A stretch of DNA of 63,069 nt, counting the filler, from Octopus bimaculoides (Eukaryota), in assembly GCF_001194135.2 (NCBI RefSeq). It is 5 parts of 5 records of this genome, joined end to end, with 100 filler letters (N's around TTAATTAATTAA, not from the genome) between each part and the next. Parts side by side here need not be neighbours in the genome. Positions count along the whole stretch, not along the records: positions 25,784 to 51,819 come from NC_068987.1; 4 more parts are not named here. One strand, written 5' to 3'. Shown in pieces: positions 28,167 to 50,156 of this stretch. How positions within the stretch are numbered: position 1 is the first letter of the stretch; every line of letters begins with the position of its first letter. The notes below the pieces were generated by a model. It was given only the letters and a program-made list of their open reading frames with translations, ran no database searches and was not told the origin of the DNA. Position numbers and translations under genes: made by a program.

Positions 28167-29240
28167 CAGGGACTGGGCAAAATAATGGAAACACTTTGTT
28201 AAATGACAGTTTTATTATTTAATAGAGAGTTGGTCTATTTTAGCATTAATCACAGTTTTATACATTGAGTAATTGATTTTTGCAAGTTCTGAAATGTTGT
28301 TAGGGGAATTTCAAGCCATTATTCTTATAAAACGTGCTTTAGCTCTTTCAGCAATGATAATGGAGTGAAGTGGCTGCTTGCTTACTACTTCAAAACACAC
28401 CATAAATGTTCGATTGTATTAAGATCTGGTGATTATGGGAGCAATGCTAGAAGTTTTCTTCATTTTCAGGCTCATTGTACCAATAGTGAATAACATTAGC
28501 CTCATGAGTCAGTGCACTATTGTCCCTGAAAATTGTGCTACCTTCAAGGAGCAACGCCTGTACTATAGGATAGATATGATCAGTCAAAATACCCAGAAAG
28601 TCCTTGGTGTTAACTCTGCAATAACTAAAGAACCAAAAGAATTCTATGATATGGCTACTCACATCATCACAAAACCACCTCCATGTTTTTACAACAGAGG
28701 TCAAAACAGTTTGAGTTGACCGCTTTTTTTACTGTATCCAGACGTAAATTCAACTGAAGTAGGGAAAATGGTGAATGATGATTCATCAAATTAGATGACA
28801 TTGTTCTATTGGTAGTAGTCTAGACACCATTTTGGTGGGACAGGAGACGTTTACCAATTTCAGCCCTCCTTTGATAGCCAGTTTTATGGAGCTCATGACA
28901 AATGGTTTTGGATGACACAGGCTTGGCTAGGTGGTGATTGAATTCTGCTACCACTTTTGCTGAGTAGTCGTATGGTTTTTTTTAGACACAATATGTTTTA
29001 CTATTCTGTAATCCCTCTCTGTGAGCTTTGTCTTCTTTTCATCCAGAATTATGCTTGCCAGAGTTGGTATTACCTTGGTTAGGAAATGCCAACGTGCTTT
29101 TAGAGACTGCACCTCTTGAAACATAAGCAATTTAACTGTTTTATTGACTGAAGCTCCAGCCATCCATGCTCCAATAATTTGTCTTGTTTGGCAATCACAT
29201 GAGTTGTGCATTTTAACTCATTTAAATATAAATACTTAAA
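28167..29240 (-). mobile_element. Tc1-like DNA transposon remnant
   Basis: Seen: TA then TIR-like CAGGGACTGGGCAAAATAATGGAAACAC at 28167; transposase pieces QIIGAWMAGASVNKT, LGILTDHIYPIVQ...IFRDNSA..H, and SPDLNTIEHLWCVL; many lesions. Confidence 0.85.
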
Positions 29241-33073: not shown

Positions 33074-33950
33074 AACCTTCAGCTGACCTGTTGCCTGCTG
33101 AACTTGCTCCTTATACTTCATTGAACTCCTTTGTTGTTGTTGTTGTTGTTGACGATGATTTTGTTATTTTGTTTTTTGTTTTTCTGTTTTCTTTTCTTGT
33201 TATCTTGATGCGGAAACAGGTCTTGAGAGCAGGTGTTGACTATAAACCTACCTTCCCCCACTCCAAGCTACAGCTGTGGGAACATACGAGAATGTACACA
33301 TAAATACACACACATACACAGAGATCTACCATGTGTATACATAAGTGTGGTGTGTGTGTAATTAACGATCAAGGAGATCAGAAATCCAAAGAGCTCTGTT
33401 TAGGAGTTAAAGATAACTATAAATTAAATAGTTATATTTGTATGTGTGTAAGTATGTGTGTGTGTATGTTTATATATATATTATATATACATACACACAT
33501 ACATACATACACATGCACACACATATATGTGTGTATTTATATGAATGTATATAGTAGATGAATAGATGTACATACATACACATACACACAGTCAACAATA
33601 CTTGCATATCCAGATTCACCCACATATGTAAATGTTTGAAATACTGACCATAATATATTATTTATCTTTCTTGTTGTTGTTACTTTTGTTGTTATCATTA
33701 TCATCATCACCACCACCACTGACATCATCCTCAACAGCAGCAGAATTACCATTCAATAGGCACAAGTCAACATTGCCAGCTAGTCTTTGATTCTTAGTCA
33801 AAATGTTGATTCACTTTTACTAGTGCTGTTTATAATTTTGAAAAAAAGTCATGAATGTCATATAATCTGCATTTGTAGTTCTGAATCTAACAATGAATTT
33901 AGCATCATCATCATTATCATCTTCATCAAAGCATTATTATTATTGTTGTT

Positions 33951-35309
33951 TAAGGTGGTGAGCTGGCAGAACTGTTAACACACTTGATGATATGCTTAGC
34001 AGTATTTTGCCCATCGCTACATTCTGAGTTCAAATTCCACCAAGGTCAACTATGCCTTTCATTCTTTTGGGGTCAATAAATTAAATACCAGTCAAGTACT
34101 GGGGGTTGATGTTATCAGCTTTTCCCCTCCCCCAAAATGGCTGCCCTTGTGGAAAAATTTGAAACCATTATTACTATTATTATTAAGGCAGCAAGCTGGC
34201 AGAATCATTAGCATGCCAGGTGAAATGCTTAGCGATATTTCATGTCAATACGTTCTTCTGAGTTCAAATTCCAGCGAGGTCACTTTGCCTTTCATCCTTT
34301 CGAGGTCAATTAATTACGTACCAGTTGTGTACTGGGATTGATCTAATCAACTGACCCTCTCACCCAAATTTCAGACCTTGTGCCTATAGTAGAAAGGATT
34401 ATAATAATAATAATAATTATTATTATTATTATTATTATTATTAAGGCAATGAGCTGACAGCATCATTAGAGCATCAAACAAAATGCTCAGTTGCATTTCT
34501 TCAAAAGTATTGAGTTCAAATACTGCCAAGGTCAGTTTTGCTTTTCATCCTTCTGAGGTCACTATGATAAAGTATCAATCAAGTACTGGGGTTGTTGTAA
34601 TGGACTAATCTCCTTCCCTTAAAATTGCTGACCTTGTGCTAAAATTTGAAGCCATTATCATTAAAGAAATCATTAAAAAATAAAGAAATTATTATCATTA
34701 TTATTATTATTATTATCATTATTATTATCATTATTATTATTATTATTATTATTAGGCATCGAGCTGGCAGAATCGTTAGCACACCGGGCAAAATGCTTAA
34801 CAGCATTTCATCTGTCCTTACGTTCTGAGTTTAAATTCCGCCGAGATCACCTTTACTTTACATCCTTTTGGGGTCGATGAAATAAGTACTAGTTACACAC
34901 TGCGGTCAATGTAATCAATTAGTCCCCTCGCCCAAAATTTCAAGCCTTGTGCTTATAGTAGAAAGGATTATTATTGTTGTTGTTGTTTTTGTTGATGTTA
35001 AGGTGGTAAACTGGCAGAATCGTTAGCACACCTGACAAAATGCTGAGTAACATTTCATCTAGCTTTACATTCTGAGTTCAAATTAAGATGTCAAGCTAGC
35101 AGAATTGTTAGCATGCCATGGAAAATGCTTCACAGCATTTCATCTTTTTTAGGTTCTGAGTTCAAATTCCACTAAGTTTGACTTTGTCTTTCAACCTTCC
35201 AAGGTCAATAAAATAAGTAACAGTTGTGCACTAGGGTCAATATAATTGACTTACCTTCTCCCACGAAATTGCTGGCTTTGTGCCAAAATTTGAAACCATT
35301 ATTATTATT

Positions 35310-35340
<31 letters not shown>

Positions 35341-36601
35341 TCTTCTAGCTTTACATTCTGAGTTCAAATGTCTCTGAGGTCAACTTTGTCTTACATCCTT
35401 TTGAAGGTCGATGAAATAAGTACCAATCAAGTACTGAGGTCAATGTAATTGACTAAGCCCCTCTCAAAAGATTTCAGACCTTGTGCCTGTAGTAGAAAGG
35501 ATTATTTCAATTATTCGGCAAGCTGGCAGAATTGTTAGCATGCCAGGCAAAATGCTTAGTGGCATTTTGTCCATCCTTNNNNNNNNNNNNNNNNNNNNNN
35601 NNNNNNNNNNNNNNNNNNNNNNNNNNNNNNNNNNNNNNNNNNNNNNNNNNNNNNNNNNNNNNNNNNNNNNNNNNNNNNNNNNNNNNNNNNNNNNNNNNNN
35701 NNNNNNNNNNNNNNNNNNNNNNNNNNNNNNNNNNNNNNNNNNNNNNNNNNNNNNNNNNNNNNNNNNNNNNNNNNNNNNNNNNNNNNNNNNNNNNNNNNNN
35801 NNNNNNNNNNNNNNNNNNNNNNNNNNNNNNNNNNNNNNNNNNNNNNNNNNNNNNNNNNNNNNNNNNNNNNNNNNNNNNNNNNNNNNNNNNNNNNNNNNNN
35901 NNNNNNNNNNNNNNNNNNNNNNNNNNNNNNNNNNNNNNNNNNNNNNNNNNNNNNNNNNNNNNNNNNNNNNNNNNNNNNNNNNNNNNNNNNNNNNNNNNNN
36001 NNNNNNNNNNNNNNNNNNNNNNNNNNNNNNNNNNNNNNNNNNNNNNNNNNNNNNNNNNNNNNNNNNNNNNNNNNNNNNNNNNNNNNNNNNNNNNNNNNNN
36101 NNNNNNNNNNNNNNNNNNNNNNNNNNNNNNNNNNNNNNNNNNNNNNNNNNNNNNNNNNNNNNNNNNNNNNNNNNNNNNNNNNNNNNNNNNNNNNNNNNNN
36201 NNNNNNNNNNNNNNNNNNNNNNNNNNNNNNNNNNNNNNNNNNNNNNNNNNNNNNNNNNNNNNNNNNNNNNNNNNNNNNNNNNNNNNNNNNNNNNNNNNNN
36301 NNNNNNNNNNNNNNNNNNNNNNNNNNNNNNNNNNNNNNNNNNNNNNNNNNNNNNNNNNNNNNNNNNNNNNNNNNNNNNNNNNNNNNNNNNNNNNNNNNNN
36401 NNNNNNNNNNNNNNNNNNNNNNNNNNNNNNNNNNNNNNNNNNNNNNNNNNNNNNNNNNNNNNNNNNNNNNNNNNNNNNNNNNNNNNNNNNNNNNNNNNNN
36501 NNNNNNNNNNNNNNNNNNNNNNNNNNNNNNNNNNNNNNNTTAATAGTATCAATTAACACTGCATTCCTACAAAATTTGCTGGCCTTGTGCCTAAATTAGA
36601 A

Positions 36602-36645
<44 letters not shown>

Positions 36646-37785
36646 TACTACTATTATTATTATTATTATTATAAGTATTGAGCTGGCAGAATCATTAGCA
36701 AGCTGGACAAAATGCTCAAAAAGCTTAGCAATATTTTTTCCAGCTTTACATTCTGAGTTCAAATTCCACCAATGTCAACTTTGCCTTTCATCCTTTTGAG
36801 GGTTGATAAAATGAGTACCAGTTGAGTACTGGGGTTGATGTAACTGACTAGCCACCTCCCTCAAAAACTTCAGGCCTTGTGCCAATAGTAGAAAGAATTA
36901 TTATTACTATTATAGCATTGAATAAAATGCTTAATGGTATTCCTTCCAGTTCTTTACATTCTGAGTTCAAATTCCATCAAGGTTGATTTTTACCTTTCAT
37001 GCTTCTGTAGTTGAATAAATGCCAATCACATACTAGAGTTGATAGAATTGACTTATAAAATCCCCTTCTTCAAGCTAATGGCTTCATGCCTATGTTTGAA
37101 ATAGTTATTATTAGGGCAGCAAGCTGGCAAATTCAGTATCATGTCAAACAAAATGCTTAGTGGCATTGCTTCTAGTTCTTAACGTTCTGAATACAAATCA
37201 GACTTTGCCTTTCATCCTTTCAAGGTTGATTAAATAAGAACCACTTGAGCACAGGAAATGATGTAATTAACCCCTCCTCCTAAAATTGCTGGCCTTGTGC
37301 CAAAATCTGAAAAGAACTGTTATTATTATTAGTAGTAGTACTAAGGTGATGAGCTGGTAGAATTGTTAGCCTGCCAGGCAAAATGCCTAGAAGCATTTCA
37401 TCCACCTTTCTGTTCTGAGTTCAAATTCAGCTGAGGTCAACTTTGCTTTCCATCCTTTCAGGGTCAATAAAACAAGTGCCAGTTGAGCACTGGGATTGAT
37501 GTAATCGACTTACCCCCTCCTTCCCAATTTCAGGCCTTAATAGTATTATTTAAGAGTGGCAGATTGGCAAATTCATTAAAGTTTTGAAAAAATGCTGTGT
37601 GGCATTTGTTCCAGCCTTTAACATTCTGAGTTCAAATCCTGCCATGGTCAACTTTACAAATTCATCTTTTCAAGGTCAGAAAATATGGTACCAGTCAACT
37701 ACAGAGATCAAATGAATTGACTAACTCCCTCCCTCACTCTGCCCAAAACTGATGGCCTTAGTGCCTAAATTATAAACCATTATTA

Positions 37786-37831
<46 letters not shown>

Positions 37832-38060
37832 CATTATTAAGGCAGTGAGCTGATAGAATTGTTTCTGCACCAGACAAAATGCTTAACAGCATTTCTTCCA
37901 TCTTTACATTCTGAGTTCAAATTCAACTGAAATATTTTTGCCTTTCATCCTTCTGAGGTTGATAAAGTAAAAATGCCAGTCAAATACTGAGATTGATGTA
38001 ATTGACTTAGCCCTCTCCCCAAAAATGTTGGGCCTTGTGCCTATAGTAGAAAGAATTATA
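33951..38060 (+). mobile_element. Head-to-tail array of at least 15 tRNA-derived Meta/Nin-core-type SINE copies separated by (ATT)n
   Basis: Seen: repeated AAGG..GAGCTGGCAGAA (A box), CTGAGTTCAAATTCC (B box) and core TTTGCCTTTCATCCTTT..GGTC.ATAAA..AAGTACCAG; all on +; one 960-N gap. Naming the core Meta/Nin is recall-based. Confidence 0.92.
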
Positions 38061-38095
38061 ATTATTATTATTATTATTATTATTCAATATATACA

Positions 38096-38860: not shown

Positions 38861-41380
38861 TTTTTAAAAAATTACTAATATTTCTTAAAAGTATCTCTTT
38901 AAAAAATATACTAAAACGAATTTTGTTGCACTTCTTTTAAATTTGTCACTTTTAGTTTACAATGTATCTACATACTATGCTACACACTACTATATTCCTT
39001 AAAATTAAAGAGACTGAATTCGGTCAAGAAATTGCCAGTAGATTGAGGTCATTGCCAATAGTCAATCGCTAATATCAAATTACATTGAATATAATGAAAA
39101 AAATTTGCGGAATAGATATACAGTATATAGGTTGAATTCATCTAAGTTTAACCACTTAAATAGTCATTTCAGCTAAGTCATCATTTATTATTACTTTTCT
39201 TTGAATAATTATTTTTACTATTTTTATTTATGTTTAATTAAGCAAATTCTACTGTTTACATCAAGATTAGATAAACTTTTTTTTTGTAATGATTATGATT
39301 GTAAATGTATATTTTGAAATAAGGAGTAGAAGAGTGAAGTGAGTTCATATGAAGACTTGCACTATTCACCTTTGAGCGGGCTGCTTCCTTTTCAAACTGA
39401 TTTGATCTACATATATATGCATATAAAAAATAGCAATATGTACACTTATTTTTATGCAATTAAATTATACAGGCTTCTTTTATTTTATTAACTTTTAGTT
39501 TACTCTATGTAATATATGCTATATAAATTGAACTCAAAATGGACAGCCCACTCATTTTGGGTAAATTTTAGTCATTTTAGACTGTTTAACTTTACCTTTC
39601 TGCCCAATTTATGTTGTATGTATATTATTACTGATACTTTATTACTACTTTATAATTTTAATTATATTTTTAAATTAATTATTATTTTAATTATAATGCT
39701 CTAGTTTTTTTGATAACAATAATATTGCGCTGCAACTTTCAAAATTGAAATAATAAATTGAAATAGTTACAAAGATTTAAATGAATTAATTATAATATAA
39801 ATGAAATAAAAAATAATAAATATTTTTATCACTGTTAATAATTTGCAAGTAAAAATCTTTTTTCTGCTTGATAATTTCTATACATCATCATCATCGTTTA
39901 ATGCCTGTTTTCCATGCTGGCATGGGTTAGACAGTTCAACTGGGATCTGGGAAGCCAGGAGGCTGCATGAGGCCCCAATCTGATCTGGCACTGTTTTTAC
40001 AGCTGGATGCCCTTCCTAACACTAACCATTCCGAGAGTGTAGTGGGTGCTTTTTACATGCCACCGGCACGAGGGGCCAGAGGAGCTGGCATTGACCACAA
40101 TCGGATAGTGCTTTTTATGTGCCATCAGCACGGAAGCCAGTCAAGGCGGCACTGGCATCAGCCACGTTCGGATGGTGCTTTTCACATGTTACTGGCATGA
40201 GGCTCACAACTACAATTTCCATTTGATTTGATTTTGATATTGCTGATGCTGATGTACTTGGCTCAATAGGTCTCCTCAAGCATTGTATGTCGCTCCACGA
40301 TCCAAGGTACTTTTGAGTGGGCTGGTTATGCGACACTGGTGTAGGTTACAGCTGTGGACTCACTTTATTTGCCGGGTCTTCTCAGTCACAGCATACTTCC
40401 AGAGGTCTTGGTCTTTTGTCATTGCCTCTGTGAGGCCCAATGTTCAATGGTCATGCTTCACCACCTCATCCCATGTGTTCCTGAGTCTCTACCCTGGATT
40501 CCTTCCACTGTTTGGGAATGGCACTTCTTCACACAGCTCTCTTCGTCCATCCACAGTACATGACCATACCAATGCAAACGTCTCTCTTGTATGCCACATC
40601 CAATGCTTCTTATGGCTAACATTTCTCTCAGGGTGCTTACACTCTGTCATGTGTGCACACTGACATTACACATCCAGCGGATCATGCTAGTTTCATTTCT
40701 TTCAAGCCTACGCATGTCTCCAGCAGTCACAGCCCATGTTTCACTGTCGTGAAGCATGGCAGTTCACACACATGCATCATACAATCTACCTTTCACTCTG
40801 ATCAGGAGGCCCTTCGTCACCAGTAGGGGTAGAAGCTTTCTGAACTTTGCCCAGGCTATTCTTATTCTAGTGGTAACACTCTCTGAGCATCCACCCCCAC
40901 TACAGACTTGGTCACCTAGGTAGCAGAAGCTATCAACTACTTCTAGTTTCTCCCCCGGGCATGTGATGGAGTCTGTTTTCTGAGCATCTGTGGTGTTTAT
41001 TGCCCCTGTGCATCTGCTGCATGTGAAAGCTATCTTCCCGGTTAATCTTCCTTTGATGTTGCTGCACCTCTTATGTGTCCATAGCTTACACTGGGAATAT
41101 CTTATGGAATTTCTACCTACACCTTTTCTACAGATCAAGCAGGGCCACCTACCTGAAGGGGTGTTGCAATTCTTAATCTTTGATCAAATGGTTTTTGTCG
41201 TTTTGTTGTAACAGTAGTTACTTACCATCTTTTTTCTGCCTTAAAATATTCATTAGTTTTGTATGGATTTAAGATTAAAATTATAAACGATTTTAAATTT
41301 TAAAAAAAGTGCAACAAAATGCGTTTTAGAAAAATTTTTTTAAGAAATACTTTCAAGAAATATTAGTAATTTTTTTAAAG
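38861..41380. repeat. ~85-bp inverted repeat pair (38861-38944 and 41295-41380)
   Basis: Seen: ttttaaaaaattactaatatttcttaaaagtatctctttaaaaaatatactaaaacgaattttgttgcacttctttta versus the minus strand of 41295-41380, tttaaaaaaattactaatatttcttgaaagtatttcttaaaaaaatttttctaaaacgcattttgttgcactttttt. Confidence 0.85.
39885..41157 (-). mobile_element. RTE-clade LINE, 5'-truncated: end of ORF with Zn-finger-like insert, long 3' UTR, (ATG)n tail
   Basis: Seen: PCLICRKGVGRNSIRYSQCKLWTHKRC...FTCSRC...LEVVDSFCYLGD...RIRIAWAKFR...RLYDACV, then SETWAVT..MRRLERNE, RRLHWYGHV, and a (CAT)n tail on + at 39883-39895. Known: RTE RT thumb/C-terminal motifs. Confidence 0.9.
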
Positions 41381-41700: not shown

Positions 41701-42066
41701 TTAAATACGTTCAAAAAATAAGGCAACAATATTATTCATTTTAGAAACGAAATTGACATTATATGCAGTAAATTGAATGTCACTAATAATATTCCATTTG
41801 TCATTATTTTTAACTATGCAAGTATAATGACCGCTATTGACTTGATTCAATGTATGCATTATGCAAGTTTTTAATTTGAAATTAGTGCCAAAAATATTTT
41901 GCTCTTTGGTATTAAAATATGTGATTTCTACATTAATTTTTCTGACAATAACATTATCATTATCATATGAAAATCTATTCAGAGAAACACATAAATATGA
42001 TGTATTGCTACCACTGCCTCCTCCTCTGTTGCTGCTTTTAGCAACCCTTGAATATGTTAGTGTCAT
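41701..42066 (-). pseudogene. C-terminal half of a ubiquitin-specific protease (peptidase C19/UCH)-like domain; intronless, 5'-truncated
   Basis: Seen: YLCVSLNRFSY...RKIN...FKLKTCIMHTLNQVNSGHYTCIVKNNDKWNIISD...IVALFFERI*. Known: USP box 4 (LxxxLKRF), His box (H..SGHY....W...D) and terminal YxLFYER. No Cys box and no good splice acceptor are visible upstream. Confidence 0.7.
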
Positions 42067-45448: not shown

Positions 45449-45580
45449 CCACTCACAAAGCTTTGGTCAGCCCAAGGCTATAGTAGAAGACACTTGCCCA
45501 AGGTGCCATGCAGTGGGACTGAACCTGGAACCATGTGGTTCATAAGCAAGCTACTTACCACACAGCCACTCCTATGCCTA
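45449..45580 (-). mobile_element. CORE-type SINE 5' half, CpG-depleted
   Basis: Seen: ccactcacaaagctttggtcagcccaaggct...gccatgcagtgggactgaacctggaacc. Confidence 0.85.
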
Positions 45581-45768: not shown

Positions 45769-48540
45769 ATGTGGCTACTAATCCATAGAACAAATGAGTT
45801 TGTTCGAAAGATGAGGTGGATTGCTTACCATCATAAGACTAAGAAGAAAAATGGAACTCTAGAAACATATGAGAAAAGTTATTATAAGAAGATATTCAAA
45901 AGTAGAAAAAATCCTCCACCTAGTCCCCTACTGGAAAATTTTGAAAAAGACTTATTTGATCTAATAGCTAATGTAAAATTCAAGGAACACCCTCTCAGAA
46001 AAAACTTACATCTGAGGAAACTAAAGGAATTTATTAAGTTATTGCATAACAAACCAGGCATTCTGATCCCAGCAGATAAAACCGGAAACTTATATAGACT
46101 TGACTATACCACCTATAGGAAACTTGTAATGAAGGAACTTAATGCTAAATATAAAATAACATCTAAAAAGAATCTATTAGACATCAATTTGAAAATCAAG
46201 GAAGTTATGTTAGAATACGACTTGGCAGACAGAACAGAACCCTTAAAACCAAGTGAAGCTAGGATTAACCTAAAGGACCATAAGAAGAACTTCCATGATA
46301 ATCATACTGCAAGGCTAATTTGTCCGACTAAGTCTGATATTGGTTGGCTTAGCAAGTCTATTCCAGACAATATCCTACTCCTTATAATTCCCAACCTAAC
46401 ACTAAAATTATGGATTGATACAGATGAGGTAATACATTGGTTTAAATCTATTGATAACATAAGTAATTATTCTTTTATCCAATTTGATATTAATAGTTAT
46501 TATTCCAGTATATCTCTTATTCTTCTGAACAAGTCTCTTATTTTTGCAAAAAACCTCTCTCATATAACTAGGGATAAAATTGACATTATTCTTTTTGCTA
46601 CAAGAACTATTATAGAATTTGAGGGTAAACTTTGGACTAGGGCTGACACCCTCGAAAACTTTGATATAGCTATGGGCTCAAGTGACTCGGCCAAAATCAC
46701 AAATCTAGTGGATGCATACCTTTTAAGGTGCCAAAATAGAGAAATCCCTGAATTACAGGGAGGTTTCTATTGGGATGATGCTCTGTTCATTATCCCTAGC
46801 AACAATAAACAATCATAGAAAGAATGAGGAAAAGAATTAGAAAATTTTCCAAAAACTTTAAGTATTACGTATGAATATGGCACAAAGGTAGTAAATTTTT
46901 TGGATACTACTTTAGGCGTTAACTCTAGATTATACTCCCCTATAGGAAACAAGGTGAGGTTACAAGATATGTGAACAAATTATCAAATCACTCCCGTAAT
47001 GTATTAAAATCGGTAGTTAAAAGTATTTCTAGGAGAATTACGAAATTATCATCAAACATTGATATTTTTAATTCCCATTCATACTACTACAATGTTGCCT
47101 TGTCTAAGGCAGGATATGACCAGGGAATTACTTTTCTTAGTCCTGTAAGTTCAGCACCATTTAATAGAGGAAAAAATGATAGCTTCAGTAATAGAAAGTC
47201 TACTAACTTACTTAGTTGTAAAAAAATACCAAATGATAAAACTTCCTACAAACCTAACATTTTAAATAATAATAGAGTTTGCTTCAATAGGAGACAGAAT
47301 ACTAAAAAGAGTATGAAGCTTAGGTTAGATAAAAAAAAAGATGACAATGTGAAAGAAATGGTTACTCCTCCAGATATGGAATCTACTAGAAATATAATCA
47401 AAACTATTAATCAAGGCACGATTCTAAGGAGCAGGGATAGTACAAATATATCCCGCCCTTACTTACACCATAAATTTAAAGGTAAGAATTTCATCTGGTT
47501 CAATATCCCATCCAACCGTGCATTATCCACAAACACATATAGAAAATTTATGGCTATTTTAGAAAAAAACTTCTCTACTTCCCATAGATGTAATAGAATC
47601 TTTTCATGTAAGACAGTTAGAATCTCATACACTACTCTTCCCAATATGGGTACCATTATAGCTAGATTAAATAAGAAGAATATAGAATTAGCCAGAATTG
47701 TTAATAATAATAATTATTATTATTATTATTATAATATTAGTAACAATGGCAATAATAACAATAATAATAATAATAAAAATAAATATAATAATAATATTAA
47801 TAATAATAATAATAATAATAGTACTGTGAACTATAACGTAAACCCCCAACGTGAGAATAGTAGTATTGATGATGATGTGATAGTGGTAGAACTTCAAATA
47901 TAAACAGTATGGATTTTAGTTCCGGTGCCCATACGGACATGGAAATTATTGATATGCCTGCTGATGTAGAGGTGGTTTTAAATGATACTACAATTAAAGT
48001 GGGGTTAGAAAATAACAGACATGAACATAACATACTTGATAACAGTAATATTAATAGCGAAAATATTAATAATAATAATAATAATAATAATTTGAATCTT
48101 AATAATAATAATATTAATAATAATAATATTAATGATAATAGTTGCAATTGTAGAGTTAAATCTCACTATCCGTTATTAGGCCATTGTCTTACCCAGAACG
48201 TAATATATAAATGTTCAATAAAAACTACAACTAATAATTTTATATATATCGTTGTTCGATAAATATGAAACAGCATCTAACCAACCACATGTCGTCCTTT
48301 AAACTTAAACATAAAGTGAATTGTACGTCATTATCCAGTAAGATTTGGAAATTAAAGGAAAGTGGAATTGGGTTTAGCCTCAAATGGGAAATAATAAGAA
48401 AAGCACAGCCTTATAGAAATAGCAGATATGGGTGTGAGCTGTGCTCTATGGAAACATGAAATTTTTAAGCAAAAAGATAAAGGCAACCGGATTAATAATC
48501 GATTAGACCTTAGGATATCATATGTACATAGTGTCACCCA
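45769..48540 (+). mobile_element. Penelope-like retroelement (RT plus C-terminal GIY-YIG endonuclease; Neptune/Nematis-type order), near full-length, frameshifted
   Basis: Seen: RKMRWIAY, IPADKTGNLY, FDINSYYSSIS, MGSSDSAKITNLV, GGFYWDD, VNFLDTTL, SNHSRN, IWFN..., SYTTLPN, then CNC...PLLGHCLTQNVIYK...NHMSSFK...TSLSSKIWKLK...WEII...CELC. These lie in three ORF pieces in different frames. Known: these are PLE RT and GIY-YIG motifs; the clade assignment is tentative. Confidence 0.9.
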
Positions 48541-48609
48541 TACTTTTAAATATTTTAGAAAGTAACACTTTATTGATCTTGTGATTCAAAACCTATAAGA
48601 AACCTCTTA

Positions 48610-49670
48610 GCTTAAAATTAGTATACATTTAGCATGTCCCATAACATCAATATTCCTTTAGTTAATACAGAGTATCAGTTTTTATAGATACAAGCTAAAT
48701 AAGTAAATAAACAAATTTTAGTTTAAAATACTTGAATTAGTATACATTTTCTATAAATCTTCTTTATTGATGTTACTAAGTTGTATATATACTTCATCAT
48801 GGTTTTTAGTGATTAAGCTATTTTATATCCTTTTTTTATAGTGTTCTACCCTACCTGATCATTTTATTACTTTTTAATACTTTATAATTGCCTTTAGATA
48901 AACTTAAATTTTGTACCCCCATAAATTCATACTTAGCATATATATAAAACAATATGGGTATCTTCACAACTTAAAATTAAATTGCTTAGATTATAATTAA
49001 ATTAATATATAGTTAATTTTGTTCTTTCACCGCAATACTAAATCTTCTTGATAACCCTAAATTTTAACTTTATACATATGGCTATATTGTTTAAAATAGT
49101 TTTAGTAATTACTTTATTTATCCCTTTCTTAAAGTGTTCCACCCTCCTGATCTTAATATTTATATTGACCTTTATACAAGTAGCCTTTCCAATTAAGTAC
49201 CCCTAAGAAAATGTAGTATCATGTACTGATTAACACTAATAACTTTTAAAACCTATATTATACCTTTAATTTAAAATTAGTATATAATTAGCATGTCCTA
49301 TAACATCAATATTCTTTTAACTAATACCGGGTATCAGTCTTGATTGAAATAAGCTAAATAAGTTAATAAACTTTTAGTTCATAATACTTAAATTATTATA
49401 CATTTTCTATAAATCTTTTCTATTGATGTTAATACAGTATATATACTTTATTATGGATTTAGTAATTAGGCTATCTTTATTCCTTTTCTATGGTGCTCTA
49501 CCCTACCTGATCATTTTATTATTTTATAATAGCCTTTAATAAATCTAATTTTTGTACCCCTATAAATTCATACTTAGCTTATATAAAACAATACCAGTAT
49601 CTCCACAACTTAAAATAATTTAATTTAATTAAATTAGTATATAGTTAACATGTTCTTTAGCCTCAGTGCT
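48610..49670 (+). repeat. Diverged direct repeat (~430 bp x2, period ~660 bp, with a partial third copy) downstream of the PLE ORF
   Basis: Seen: 48610-49040 resembles 49270-49665 (e.g. ttagcatgtcc-ataacatcaatattc; ctaccctacctgatcatttt; tttgtacccc-ataaattcatacttagc). Partial copy at 49080-49170. Confidence 0.8.
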
Positions 49671-49904
49671 CCTTTATTAAATATCAGTAAAATCCAATTG
49701 ATCAATCTCCATAGATAGCATCTAATAAGTTAATATATGGGTAAATAATTTGTATAAATATGAAACTATTTCTATGTAATTTCTTTTCCTTCCTCTATTG
49801 TGGTAAAATTTGGTATATACTCAATAGTATTCGAATGAAATTTTATCCTTCTGTTATAATATCATTCTTAATAATACATGTATATACATATATGTATATA
49901 TATG

Positions 49905-50156
49905 CCAGTGCCGCTTGACCAGCTCCTGTGCAGGTGGCACATAAAAAAACACCATTTGAGCGTGGCTGTTGCCAGTACCACCTGACTGGCCCTCATGTTG
50001 GTGGCATGTAAAAGCACCCACTACACTCTCGGAGTGGTTGGCATTAGGAAGGGCATCCAGCTGTAGAAACTCTGCCAGATCAGATTGGAACCTAGTGCAG
50101 CCATCTGGTTCGCCAGTCCTCAGTCAAATTGTCCAACCCATGCCAGCATGGGAAGC
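49905..50156 (+). mobile_element. RTE LINE 3' UTR fragment (same family)
   Basis: Seen: reverse complement of the 29548-29800 sequence; ends ccaacccatgccagcatggg at a gap. Confidence 0.85.

What the first reader, a model, noticed from the sequence alone, without database searches (positions are those of the whole stretch)
33951..38060. 4-kb head-to-tail SINE array in which two different 3' tails alternate
Seen: at least 15 co-oriented copies, each starting right after the previous (ATT)n tail. Tail 1 is AAATTGCTGGCCTTGTGCCAAAATTTGAAACC and tail 2 is AATTTCAGGCCTTGTGCCTATAGTAGAAAGG. By my reading the order is 1,2,1,2,1,2,[gap],1,2,1?,1,2,1,2, so 10 of 11 contiguous pairs alternate (tails near 34150, 34385, 34640, 34950, 35285, 35485, 36590, 36880, 37090, 37300, 37535, 37765, 38040). 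Copies differ in decay (the 34753 copy keeps many CpGs), arguing against one recent tandem duplication. Inference: a dimeric or multimeric SINE transcript, or reciprocal targeting of each subfamily to the other's tail.
Basis: partly seen in the sequence, partly recalled or inferred. Interest (0 to 1): 0.72.

Follow-up and report, generated by a model that had tools for sequence, protein, structure and literature searches.

The report
Octopus SINE pile-up in ATT tails
A 4-kb stretch of an octopus genome holds at least 14 copies of one short mobile element, all pointing the same way; they most likely accumulated one by one because new copies land in the ATT-repeat tails of older ones, and the near-perfect alternation of two tail types does not need a special mechanism.

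Summary
The array is real. There are 14 distinct SINE-like units (15 fragments), all on the + strand, at 33950-38084. They are joined only by (ATT)n-type repeats, and the rest of the 26-kb piece has none.

One "alternating" T1 unit (35086-35298) is nested inside a T2 unit, flanked by a 31-bp target-site duplication. By element order, T2-T2 and T1-T1 neighbours therefore exist (8 of 10 pairs alternate, P=0.10). The two tails are ends of a graded series that shares one small hairpin.

On the body tree the units scatter among copies from O. sinensis and O. vulgaris. There is no odd/even clade and no single array clade. Unit ages differ sharply: intact CpGs are 7/15 in one unit and 0-3/15 in the others. 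This rules out duplication of a dimer and retroposition of dimeric transcripts.

The best explanation is serial, independent retroposition into resident (ATT)n tails, with orientation fixed by pairing between the RNA tail and the nicked DNA. Older T1 units were later interleaved by younger T2 units; simulations of this give the observed order with P=0.07-0.25. An O. vulgaris locus has a T2-T2-T2 mini-array.

This is a new instance of a known kind of structure, of modest interest. The genome-wide neighbour test could not be run.

The parts
33950..34184 (+). U1, full-length unit with T1 tail (GGCTGCCCTTGTGGAAAAATTTGAAACC), then a short ATT/ACT linker. An ATC/ATT/GTT microsatellite remnant (33890-33949) precedes it.
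   Evidence: nhmmer hit 33952-34167; tail match; 0/15 CpG intact
34185..34442 (+). U2, full-length unit with T2 tail, then an (ATA)n(ATT)n tail. Its body belongs to the younger subfamily seen in O. sinensis.
   Evidence: 3/15 CpG; groups with S757/S15437/S17904
34443..34753 (+). U3, T1 unit of the old body subfamily B, then a ~100-bp degenerate ATT/ATC/A-rich linker
34754..34999 (+). U4, T2 unit and the youngest in the array (7/15 CpG intact), then an ATT/GTT linker
35000..35084 (+). U5a, the 5' part (consensus positions 2-86) of a T2 unit interrupted by U6. Its last 31 bp are the upstream copy of the TSD.
35086..35339 (+). U6, full-length T1 unit plus (ATT)n tail, inserted inside U5
   Evidence: 31-bp TSD with 2 mismatches, sharing the private CTAGC variant
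35340..35516 (+). U5b, the 3' part (positions 56-217) of the interrupted T2 unit with its T2 tail, then a short ATT linker
35517..35578 (+). U7, head only (positions 7-68), cut by the assembly gap; tail type unknown; little diverged
35579..36539 (.). Assembly gap (961 N). It must hold the rest of U7 and the head of U8, and probably further units.
36540..36672 (+). U8, the 3' part only of an old T1b unit (GCCTAAATTAGAAAC), with an (ACT)17(ATT)6 tail
36673..36907 (+). U9, full-length T2 unit with a 9-bp internal insertion, then a short ATT linker
36908..37112 (+). U10, 5'-truncated old unit (starts at position 23) with an intermediate tail (GCCTATGTTTGAAATAG)
37113..37342 (+). U11, T1 unit with an internal deletion, then an ATT/AGT linker. 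It forms a T1-T1 neighbour pair with U10.
37343..37553 (+). U12, T2 unit with a deletion inside the tail hairpin (…CAGGCCTTAATAGTA)
37554..37838 (+). U13, the most diverged unit (30% non-CpG), T1b-like tail, then an (ATT)20 tail
   Evidence: groups with the O. sinensis copy S15669
37839..38084 (+). U14, T2 unit carrying body subfamily B, then an (ATT)10 tail. The array ends here, followed by a (TA)n run and a second gap.

Best explanation
The array is a pile-up of independent retroposition events of one octopus SINE-like family: a body of about 215 bp, a short 3' hairpin domain and an (ATT)n tail.

Inferred mechanism. A SINE transcript ending in (AUU)n is copied by a partner LINE's reverse transcriptase at a nick in the chromosome. 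Priming works best where the nicked strand can pair with (AUU)n. That strand is the (AAT)n bottom strand of an existing (ATT)n tract. The tails of resident copies are almost the only such tracts in the region, so new copies land in old tails. Only one strand can pair, so new copies take the same orientation as the resident copy. Repeated over tens of millions of years, this gives a head-to-tail array whose units differ in age and source subfamily.

T1 and T2 are two lineages of the same 3' hairpin domain. The T1 units are on average older. Younger T2 units later dropped into the T1 tails, which produces a mostly alternating order as a by-product.

Shown: co-orientation, junctions made only of microsatellite, a TSD around a single unit, mixed ages, mixed subfamilies, and absence of copies from the flanks.

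Inferred: the pairing mechanism, the identity of the enzyme, and the two-wave history.
For: - 14 units are all on the + strand and there are none elsewhere in 26 kb; orientation P=1.2e-4.
- Every inter-unit junction is (ATT)n-like sequence, and 9 of the 10 perfect (ATT)>=4 runs in the piece lie in the array.
- Single units retropose. U6 has a 31-bp TSD. External copies have TSDs of 19, about 16 and 14 bp, and the T1 TSDs start with ATT/TATT.
- U10 and the external copy V8155 are 5'-truncated and sit directly on ATT repeats.
- Ages differ. Intact CpGs are 7/15 in U4 versus 6/74 in the other T2 units (P=0.0009). T2 has 13/89 versus T1 1/87 (P=0.0012). Non-CpG divergence ranges from 0.09 to 0.30.
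- Body phylogeny: array units interleave with O. sinensis and O. vulgaris copies, with no clade by tail type (Fitch 4 changes, P=0.59).
- Sharing of derived sites is the same for same-type pairs (2.18) and different-type pairs (2.11). Subfamily B variants are also carried by an unlinked O. sinensis copy.
- The same architecture occurs elsewhere. L002 8136-8767 in O. vulgaris reads (ATT)6, three co-oriented T2 units, (ATT)4, between unique flanks.
- Two-wave simulations give an order this alternating at P=0.07-0.25.
- Literature: 3' microsatellite-like ends of RTE-related SINEs and LINEs correlate with the choice of insertion site, with base pairing proposed as the cause (PMC6007223). Microsatellite-specific LINEs (Dong, (TAA)n) occur in molluscs (PMC7998251). 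Dong-R4, RTE and CR1 LINEs are recently active in O. vulgaris, where SINEs make up 11.6% of the genome (PMC13282606).
Against: - No partner LINE with this 3' domain was found in the 68 kb available, so the enzyme and its specificity are unknown.
- (AAT)n tracts at 47703-48127 have received no copy, so not every ATT-type tract is hit.
- By tail order the alternation is nominally unlikely (P=0.012; P=0.008 if the gap edges were a single unit).
- The T1 unit U6 is younger than the T2 unit it interrupts, so the two waves overlapped.
- Array-array pairs share more derived sites than array-external pairs (2.14 versus 1.37). I attribute this to subfamily sampling, but it does not exclude a few local duplications.
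- External sampling is tiny: 10 copies in 42 kb.
Confidence: 0.7

Rival explanations
1. Heterotypic (reciprocal) targeting. T2 copies prefer the neighbourhood of a T1 3' end and the reverse, for example because the machinery recognises the resident element's 3' domain as well as the ATT tract. The alternation would then be a real insertion bias.
For: 10 of 11 tail pairs alternate (P=0.012). The figure is 9 of 9 if the ambiguous U10 is dropped (P=0.005). The two tails keep one hairpin through a compensatory pair, so they are functionally related.
Against: U4-U5 (T2-T2) and U10-U11 (T1-T1) are neighbours. U6 (T1) landed inside a T2 body, not behind a tail. The O. vulgaris mini-array is T2-T2-T2. 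A two-wave model without any such bias is not rejected (P=0.07-0.25). The distances from a T1 end to the next T2 start range from 12 to about 97 bp with no pattern.
Confidence: 0.07
2. Tandem amplification of a T1-T2 dimer by unequal crossing-over or replication slippage, followed by long divergence.
For: The order is regular. SINE tandem arrays attributed to unequal recombination are described in the blood clam (PMC11481361). Array-array pairs share somewhat more derived sites than array-external pairs.
Against: There is no odd/even clustering. T1-T1 distances are 35% versus 26% for T2-T2, whereas a shared duplication history predicts equal values. CpG retention differs sharply between units of the same type. 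The multi-site body variants GTCAAGTACT and GTTGAGCACT are mixed within both tail types and also occur in other species. Truncations, linkers and indels are all private to single units.
Confidence: 0.05
3. Retroposition of read-through dimeric or multimeric Pol III transcripts. The consensus unit and the ATT tail contain no TTTT terminator, so transcription could run from one unit into the next.
For: The consensus has no T4 run and (ATT)n has none, so read-through is plausible (consensus, by inspection).
Against: Monomers carry their own TSDs. Putative dimer partners differ in age: U3 0/15 versus U4 7/15 CpG, P=0.006. The T1 halves are the most diverged from each other, so they do not derive from one master dimer. 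Linker lengths range from 12 to about 100 bp.
Confidence: 0.04
4. Some neighbouring units were laid down in a single event. The reverse transcriptase jumped from the 5' end of one SINE RNA to the (AUU)n end of another, giving concatemers. This would complement serial insertion rather than replace it.
For: Most units are full-length at the 5' end and abut the preceding ATT run directly. Units from different subfamilies sit side by side. End-to-end template jumping is known for non-LTR reverse transcriptases (my own knowledge of work on R2; no paper was checked here).
Against: Ages differ between neighbours: U3/U4, and U13/U14 at 0.30 versus 0.185 non-CpG divergence. The nested U6 needs a separate event. 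Nothing here can show co-insertion.
Confidence: 0.1
5. Assembly artefact: unlinked SINE copies were chained together through their shared ATT tails in a short-read scaffold.
For: The piece has many N gaps, including one inside the array and one just after it. Microsatellite junctions are where short-read assemblies mis-join.
Against: The units are 22-43% different from each other, so they are not collapsible repeats. A gap-free chromosome-level O. vulgaris assembly shows the same architecture on a smaller scale. The nested unit with its TSD is a coherent structure.
Confidence: 0.03

Closest known systems
Tandem-like SINE arrays in other molluscs and plants (for example Scapharca broughtonii, arrays of 4-15 units; PMC11481361)
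   Same: Co-oriented SINE units lie head to tail, up to about 15 per array, and sometimes mix families.
   Different: The clam arrays consist of highly similar units sharing the same truncation and the same TSD, and are attributed to unequal recombination. Here the units differ in age, subfamily, truncation and linker, which points to serial independent insertion.
Microsatellite-targeting non-LTR retrotransposons (Dong/R4 in (TAA)n; PMC7998251, PMC3774820)
   Same: Insertion is confined to an ATT/TAA trinucleotide repeat. Dong-R4 LINEs are recently active in Octopus vulgaris (PMC13282606).
   Different: Bombyx Dong is preceded by (TAA)n on its sense strand (primer in PMC3774820). These units carry (ATT)n on the sense strand, which is the opposite polarity. 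No Dong-like partner sharing the 3' domain was found.
RTE-, CR1- and L2-type 'stringent' SINE-LINE pairs with a 3' stem-loop and a terminal short tandem repeat (PMC6007223; UnaL2/UnaSINE1 from my own knowledge)
   Same: There is a short conserved 3' hairpin followed by a simple-repeat tail. TSDs begin with bases that match the tail repeat. Modular tails sit on one body ('mosaic' evolution, PMC11481361).
   Different: The partner LINE is not identified. The microhomology reported for RTE is 1-2 bases, whereas here whole tails serve as targets.
Octopus tRNA-derived SINEs OK/OR1/OR2 (Ohshima and Okada 1994, cited in PMC4824008 and PMC4758252) and the octopus-specific SINE of the genome papers
   Same: Same host genus, similar size, and a box A/B-like head. 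To my eye the body resembles the CORE domain (from memory, not tested).
   Different: No reference sequence was available, so family identity is untested. ARAGORN and Rfam do not recognise a tRNA in the head.

Membership tests
SINE (LINE-dependent short retroposon) | Short, non-coding and interspersed in many copies | tested here: met
   Units are about 215 bp. There are 14 in the window and 10 more in 42 kb of O. sinensis and O. vulgaris.
SINE (LINE-dependent short retroposon) | Variable-length target-site duplications around single copies | tested here: met
   TSDs of 31, 19, about 16 and 14 bp.
SINE (LINE-dependent short retroposon) | Head derived from a Pol III RNA (tRNA) with internal A and B boxes | tested here: inconclusive
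   By eye there are box-like motifs (TGGCAGAATCG; GAGTTCAAATTCC). ARAGORN and Rfam give no tRNA hit, even for CpG-intact copies.
SINE (LINE-dependent short retroposon) | 3' domain shared with a partner LINE | tested here: inconclusive
   No LINE 3' end with the T1 or T2 motif was found in the window, L001 or L002. The sample is too small to exclude one.
SINE (LINE-dependent short retroposon) | Simple-repeat tail | tested here: met
   (ATT)n of 10-22 repeats, and one (ACT)17.
SINE-derived satellite / tandem duplication of a dimer | Units in the same register (odd or even) form clades and share private mutations | tested here: not met
   Fitch 4 changes, P=0.59. Sharing ratios are 2.18 (same type) versus 2.11 (different type).
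SINE-derived satellite / tandem duplication of a dimer | Units of equal age with shared truncations, junctions or TSDs | tested here: not met
   CpG retention ranges from 0/15 to 7/15. All truncations and linkers are private.
Dimeric (complex) SINE | The TSD flanks the dimer rather than the monomers, the linker is constant, and the halves are of equal age | tested here: not met
   There is a monomer TSD (U6) and isolated monomers exist. Linkers range from 12 to about 100 bp. U3 versus U4 CpG retention differs at P=0.006.
Dong/R4-type (TAA)n-specific retroposition | Insertions confined to TAA/ATT trinucleotide repeats | tested here: met
   For 12 of 13 visible units the 5' end abuts ATT-type repeats. 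But isolated copies also occur in unique DNA, so the preference is not absolute.
Dong/R4-type (TAA)n-specific retroposition | (TAA)n on the element's sense strand, as in Bombyx Dong | tested here: not met
   The sense strand carries (ATT)n. The Dong primer shows (TAA)7 upstream in the sense orientation (PMC3774820).
CORE-SINE (OR1/OR2 of octopus) | Presence of the ~60-bp CORE domain | not tested
   No reference sequence was held. The resemblance is recalled from memory only.

The most novel reading that the evidence does not exclude
The alternation is a true insertion bias. Each tail lineage would home preferentially to the 3' end of the other, or T1-T2 read-through heterodimers would be a mobile unit. 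Octopus SINE arrays would then grow by a rule-based, two-partner process rather than at random.
Probability: 0.07. Interest if true: 0.6.

Novelty: new member of a known kind. Interest (0 to 1): 0.3.

Why it matters
SINEs make up 4-12% of octopus genomes and have been linked to genome reshuffling (PMC12988792, PMC13282606). If copies home to each other's ATT tails, three things would follow. It would explain why these elements cluster. It would explain where most (ATT)n microsatellites in these genomes come from. And counts of "insertions near genes" would not be independent events. Such arrays also record successive subfamily waves at a single locus. The case is also a warning that a regular-looking order can arise from two overlapping waves of insertion.

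Tried and rejected
- Genome-wide neighbour test: not possible. No octopus genome is searchable by DNA here. Pattern scans for the SINE found nothing in viral contigs or metagenome contigs.
- I reached octopus DNA only indirectly, through transposon-encoded proteins. The third search returned a LINE family spread across many marine invertebrates and no further octopus proteins.
- An exact look-up of a window ORF found no record, so the source scaffold and the orthologous locus could not be fetched.
- tRNA origin: ARAGORN and Rfam at permissive thresholds found no tRNA. The Rfam hits were microsatellite palindromes matching miRNA models, which are spurious.
- Partner LINE: no T1/T2-like 3' end outside SINE copies.
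- Whole-tail RNA folds are no more stable than shuffled sequence (z=-0.9 to +0.2). Only the 4-bp inner stem is supported by covariation.
- Literature: I found no paper describing these octopus arrays. SINEBase supplements and Albertin et al. 2015 were not held.
- Dong as the partner is doubtful because the repeat polarity is reversed.
Full report
**What is there**

Region 33950-38084 is a chain of short retroposon units. A profile HMM built from ten copies finds 15 fragments. All are on the + strand and all lie inside 33950-38055. Nothing above noise is found on either strand in the rest of the piece, 25784-51819. The fragments make up 14 distinct units, U1 to U14. The hits at 35000-35084 and 35340-35501 are two halves of one unit, U5.

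Units are joined only by (ATT)n-type microsatellite. TRF finds runs of 10-22 repeats and one (ACT)17 run. Nine of the ten perfect (ATT)>=4 runs in the piece lie in the array. Same-strand orientation of 14 units has two-sided P=1.2e-4.

The host is an octopus:
- Transposon ORFs elsewhere in the window have their closest named relatives in O. bimaculoides, O. sinensis and O. vulgaris.
- The same retroposon occurs five times in a 21-kb O. sinensis locus (L001) and five times in a 21-kb O. vulgaris locus (L002).

**The two tails**

The quoted T2 motif occurs with at most 3 mismatches at 34372, 34941, 35475, 36871 and 38029. The T1 motif occurs at 34141, 34628, 35272, 36579 and 37289. Shuffled sequence gives no matches. 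U12 is a T2 unit with a deletion in the tail.

The tails are not two clean classes. U8 and U13 read GCCTAAATTAGAAAC, and U10 reads GCCTATGTTTGAAATAG. These are intermediate between T1a (GCCAAAATTTGAAACC) and T2 (GCCTATAGTAGAAAGG). O. sinensis also has a third, unrelated tail type.

All T1 and T2 forms can form one small hairpin, GGC-CUUGU-GCC. Its closing pair is U-A in T1a, A-U in T2 and U.U in the intermediates. Across 20 copies, 81% of cells pair, against 27-51% when the partner column is slid. No shuffle out of 500 reaches the observed covariation score. This is essentially one compensated change inherited by many copies, and the whole-tail folds are no more stable than shuffles. I therefore read it as a hint of an element recognised by a LINE reverse transcriptase, not as proof.

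**The gap**

- The left edge, U7, covers consensus positions 1-67 and has 2/48 non-CpG mismatches. That is the lowest in the array.
- The right edge, U8, covers positions 154-213 and has 13/28. That is the highest.
- They are therefore different units.
- The gap must hold at least the remaining ~150 bp of U7, a tail, and ~150 bp of U8. If 961 N is about right, it also holds roughly 2-3 whole units.
- The order across the gap is unknown, so I scored the two sides separately.

**The alternation**

By tail order the series is 1,2,1,2,1,2 | 1,2,1?,1,2,1,2. That is 10 of 11 alternating pairs, with permutation P=0.012.

The third T1, U6 (35086-35298), is not behind a tail. It lies inside the T2 unit U5. 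It is flanked by a 31-bp duplication of U5 positions 56-86 that is 29/31 identical and shares a private CTAGC variant. By element order, U4 (T2) is therefore followed directly by U5 (T2). With the nested unit removed, 8 of 10 pairs alternate (P=0.10). U10-U11 is a T1-T1 neighbour pair.

**Duplication versus insertion**

I built a CpG-restored consensus from the 12 near-complete array units plus the 10 external copies.

1. Ages differ.
   - U4 keeps 7/15 CpGs, while the other T2 units together keep 6/74 (Fisher P=0.0009).
   - T2 units keep 13/89 and T1 units 1/87 (P=0.0012).
   - Non-CpG divergence ranges from 0.09 to 0.30 and is higher in T1 (Mann-Whitney P=0.03).
   - T1-T1 distances average 35% and T2-T2 distances 26%. 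A shared dimer-duplication history predicts equal values.
2. Tail type does not structure the body.
   - The permutation test of between-type versus within-type distance gives P=0.21.
   - Sharing of derived non-CpG sites is 2.18 times expectation for same-type pairs and 2.11 times for different-type pairs.
3. On a neighbour-joining tree of non-CpG body sites, array units interleave with copies from other species.
   - U13 groups with an O. sinensis T1 copy.
   - U2 groups with the young O. sinensis T2 clade.
   - U6 and U9 group with O. vulgaris copies.
   - Tail type needs 4 changes on the tree (P=0.59).
4. A multi-site body haplotype (positions 29, 32, 35, 58 and 142-143, GTCAAGTACT) is carried by U3, U10 and U13 (T1) and by U14 (T2). 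An unlinked O. sinensis copy carries it too. It is therefore a genome-wide subfamily, not a local duplicate.
5. Truncations (U10 from position 23), indels and linker sequences are all private to single units.

**Single units move, and they prefer ATT**

Besides U6, isolated copies have clean TSDs:
- 19 bp (O. vulgaris T1, GATATTTCWGTTAATTAGT)
- about 16 bp (O. vulgaris T1, RTATTAAAAG…)
- 14 bp (O. sinensis, third tail type)

The T1 TSDs, including that of U6 (ATTTCATC…), begin with ATT or TATT. With n=3 this is only suggestive.

In O. vulgaris, L002 8136-8767 reads: unique DNA, (ATT)6, a 5'-truncated T2, (ATT)5, T2, ATTATT, T2, (ATT)4, unique DNA. Head-to-tail arrays on ATT tracts are therefore a general habit of this family. 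Same-type neighbours occur. The seed can be a plain ATT tract. All three perfect (ATT)>=4 runs in that locus belong to this mini-array.

**Mechanism (inferred)**

In target-primed reverse transcription, the nicked DNA strand primes on the 3' end of the RNA. An RNA ending in (AUU)n can pair only with the (AAT)n strand. That strand is the bottom strand of a resident (ATT)n tail. A copy primed there takes the orientation of the resident copy. This accounts for the clustering and the uniform orientation together.

Published work on RTE-related SINEs and LINEs reports that 3' microsatellite-like ends correlate with the choice of insertion site, and proposes such pairing (PMC6007223). LINEs specific for (TAA)n (Dong/R4) are reported in molluscs (PMC7998251). 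Dong-R4, RTE and CR1 are recently active in O. vulgaris (PMC13282606).

I could not identify the partner. No LINE 3' end with this domain occurs in the 68 kb available. The repeat polarity is also opposite to that of Bombyx Dong, which has (TAA)n upstream on its sense strand (PMC3774820).

**Why the order alternates**

The T1 units are older on average. If a T1 chain came first and T2 copies later fell into tails, an order with at most 2 same-type neighbours among 11 pairs arises in 7% of simulations when all tails are equal targets. It arises in 12% when T2 tails count half, and in 25% when only T1 tails are hit. T1 tails are in fact the longer ones. The waves overlapped, because U6 (T1) interrupts U5 (T2).

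The alternation therefore needs no special rule. But the sample is one array, and a heterotypic bias is not excluded. Adding the two same-type pairs from O. vulgaris gives 10 of 13 alternating pairs (binomial P=0.046).

**Comparison with what is known**

Tandem-like SINE arrays of 4-15 units, sometimes mixing families, are described in the clam Scapharca broughtonii. There they are attributed to unequal recombination, because the units are nearly identical and share TSDs and truncations (PMC11481361). The octopus array looks similar but has the opposite signature: unequal ages, mixed subfamilies and private junctions. That fits repeated homing.

I found no paper describing these arrays in octopus. 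The literature held here is incomplete, and the SINE family itself is long known.

Family membership as a tRNA-derived SINE is only partly testable. TSDs, size, tail and copy number fit. ARAGORN and Rfam see no tRNA in the head, even in CpG-intact copies.

**Verdict**

- The dimer readings are contradicted.
- Reciprocal targeting is unnecessary and not obligatory.
- The most likely account is serial tail-directed retroposition with two overlapping subfamily waves.
- This is a new instance of a known kind of structure. Interest is modest (0.3).
- The genome-wide neighbour table and an orthologous-locus comparison would settle the remaining doubt.

Noticed in passing
window 35000-35501: A T1 unit (35086-35339, tail included) is nested inside a T2 unit. 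It is flanked by an unusually long 31-bp target-site duplication made of SINE body sequence. This shows that insertion is not strictly limited to tails.
   Followed up: yes
window tails, e.g. 35274-35284, 36873-36883; alignment A1: The T1 and T2 3' domains share a 4-bp-stem hairpin (GGC-CUUGU-GCC). Its closing pair is U-A in T1, A-U in T2 and U.U in the intermediate tails, which is a compensatory change.
   Followed up: partly
L002 8136-8767 (O. vulgaris OX597814.1): A mini-array of three co-oriented T2 units sits on ATT repeats between unique flanks. The first unit is 5'-truncated and is preceded by a plain (ATT)6 with no SINE upstream.
   Followed up: yes
window 45449-45580, 51330-51461, 51534-51607: A second short repeat family is present (80-86% identical copies). 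Its reverse complement looks tRNA-like (…GGTTCCAGGTTCAGTCCCACTGC). Each copy lies next to (TA)n/(TG)n repeats, and two copies are 146 bp apart.
   Followed up: no
window 48607-49700: An AT-rich stretch is duplicated in tandem with a period of about 656 bp (two to three copies, 75-89% identical).
   Followed up: no
window 45769-48262 (+): Three consecutive long ORFs (349, 310 and 117 aa) have no Pfam hit. They are 73% identical over a quarter of their length to an O. sinensis 'uncharacterized protein', and 32-41% identical to unnamed (ENA) proteins, one with a reverse-transcriptase domain. The second and third ORFs contain Asn-rich runs encoded by (AAT)n. This is probably a retroelement. To my eye it is Penelope-like, with a GIY-YIG-like motif (not tested).
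   Followed up: partly
window ~40000-41200 (-); also 39909-40053 vs 50010-50154: A degraded LINE 3' half (reverse-transcriptase C-terminus plus a PHD-like finger) is present. Relatives are 50-58% identical in a hydrozoan (Hydractinia), amphioxus and many marine metagenome contigs. A 145-nt inverted copy of its end lies 10 kb away.
   Followed up: partly
window 41701-42066 (-): A 121-aa ORF matches the ubiquitin carboxyl-terminal hydrolase family (Pfam UCH, E=2.5e-7). It lies just upstream of the LINE fragment on the same strand. It may be a captured gene fragment or a pseudogene.
   Followed up: no
window 28447-29211 (-): By eye, two ORF fragments look like the N- and C-terminal parts of a Tc1-like transposase. 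They have no Pfam hit at E<=0.01.
   Followed up: no
window 36602-36653: One unit carries an (ACT)17 run before its (ATT)6. This is a tail whose repeat unit mutated and then expanded.
   Followed up: no
L001 16619-16781: A (GTA)n/(TAC)n palindromic microsatellite scores E=1e-13 against plant miRNA models in Rfam, below their gathering scores. This is a low-complexity artefact, not a gene.
   Followed up: yes
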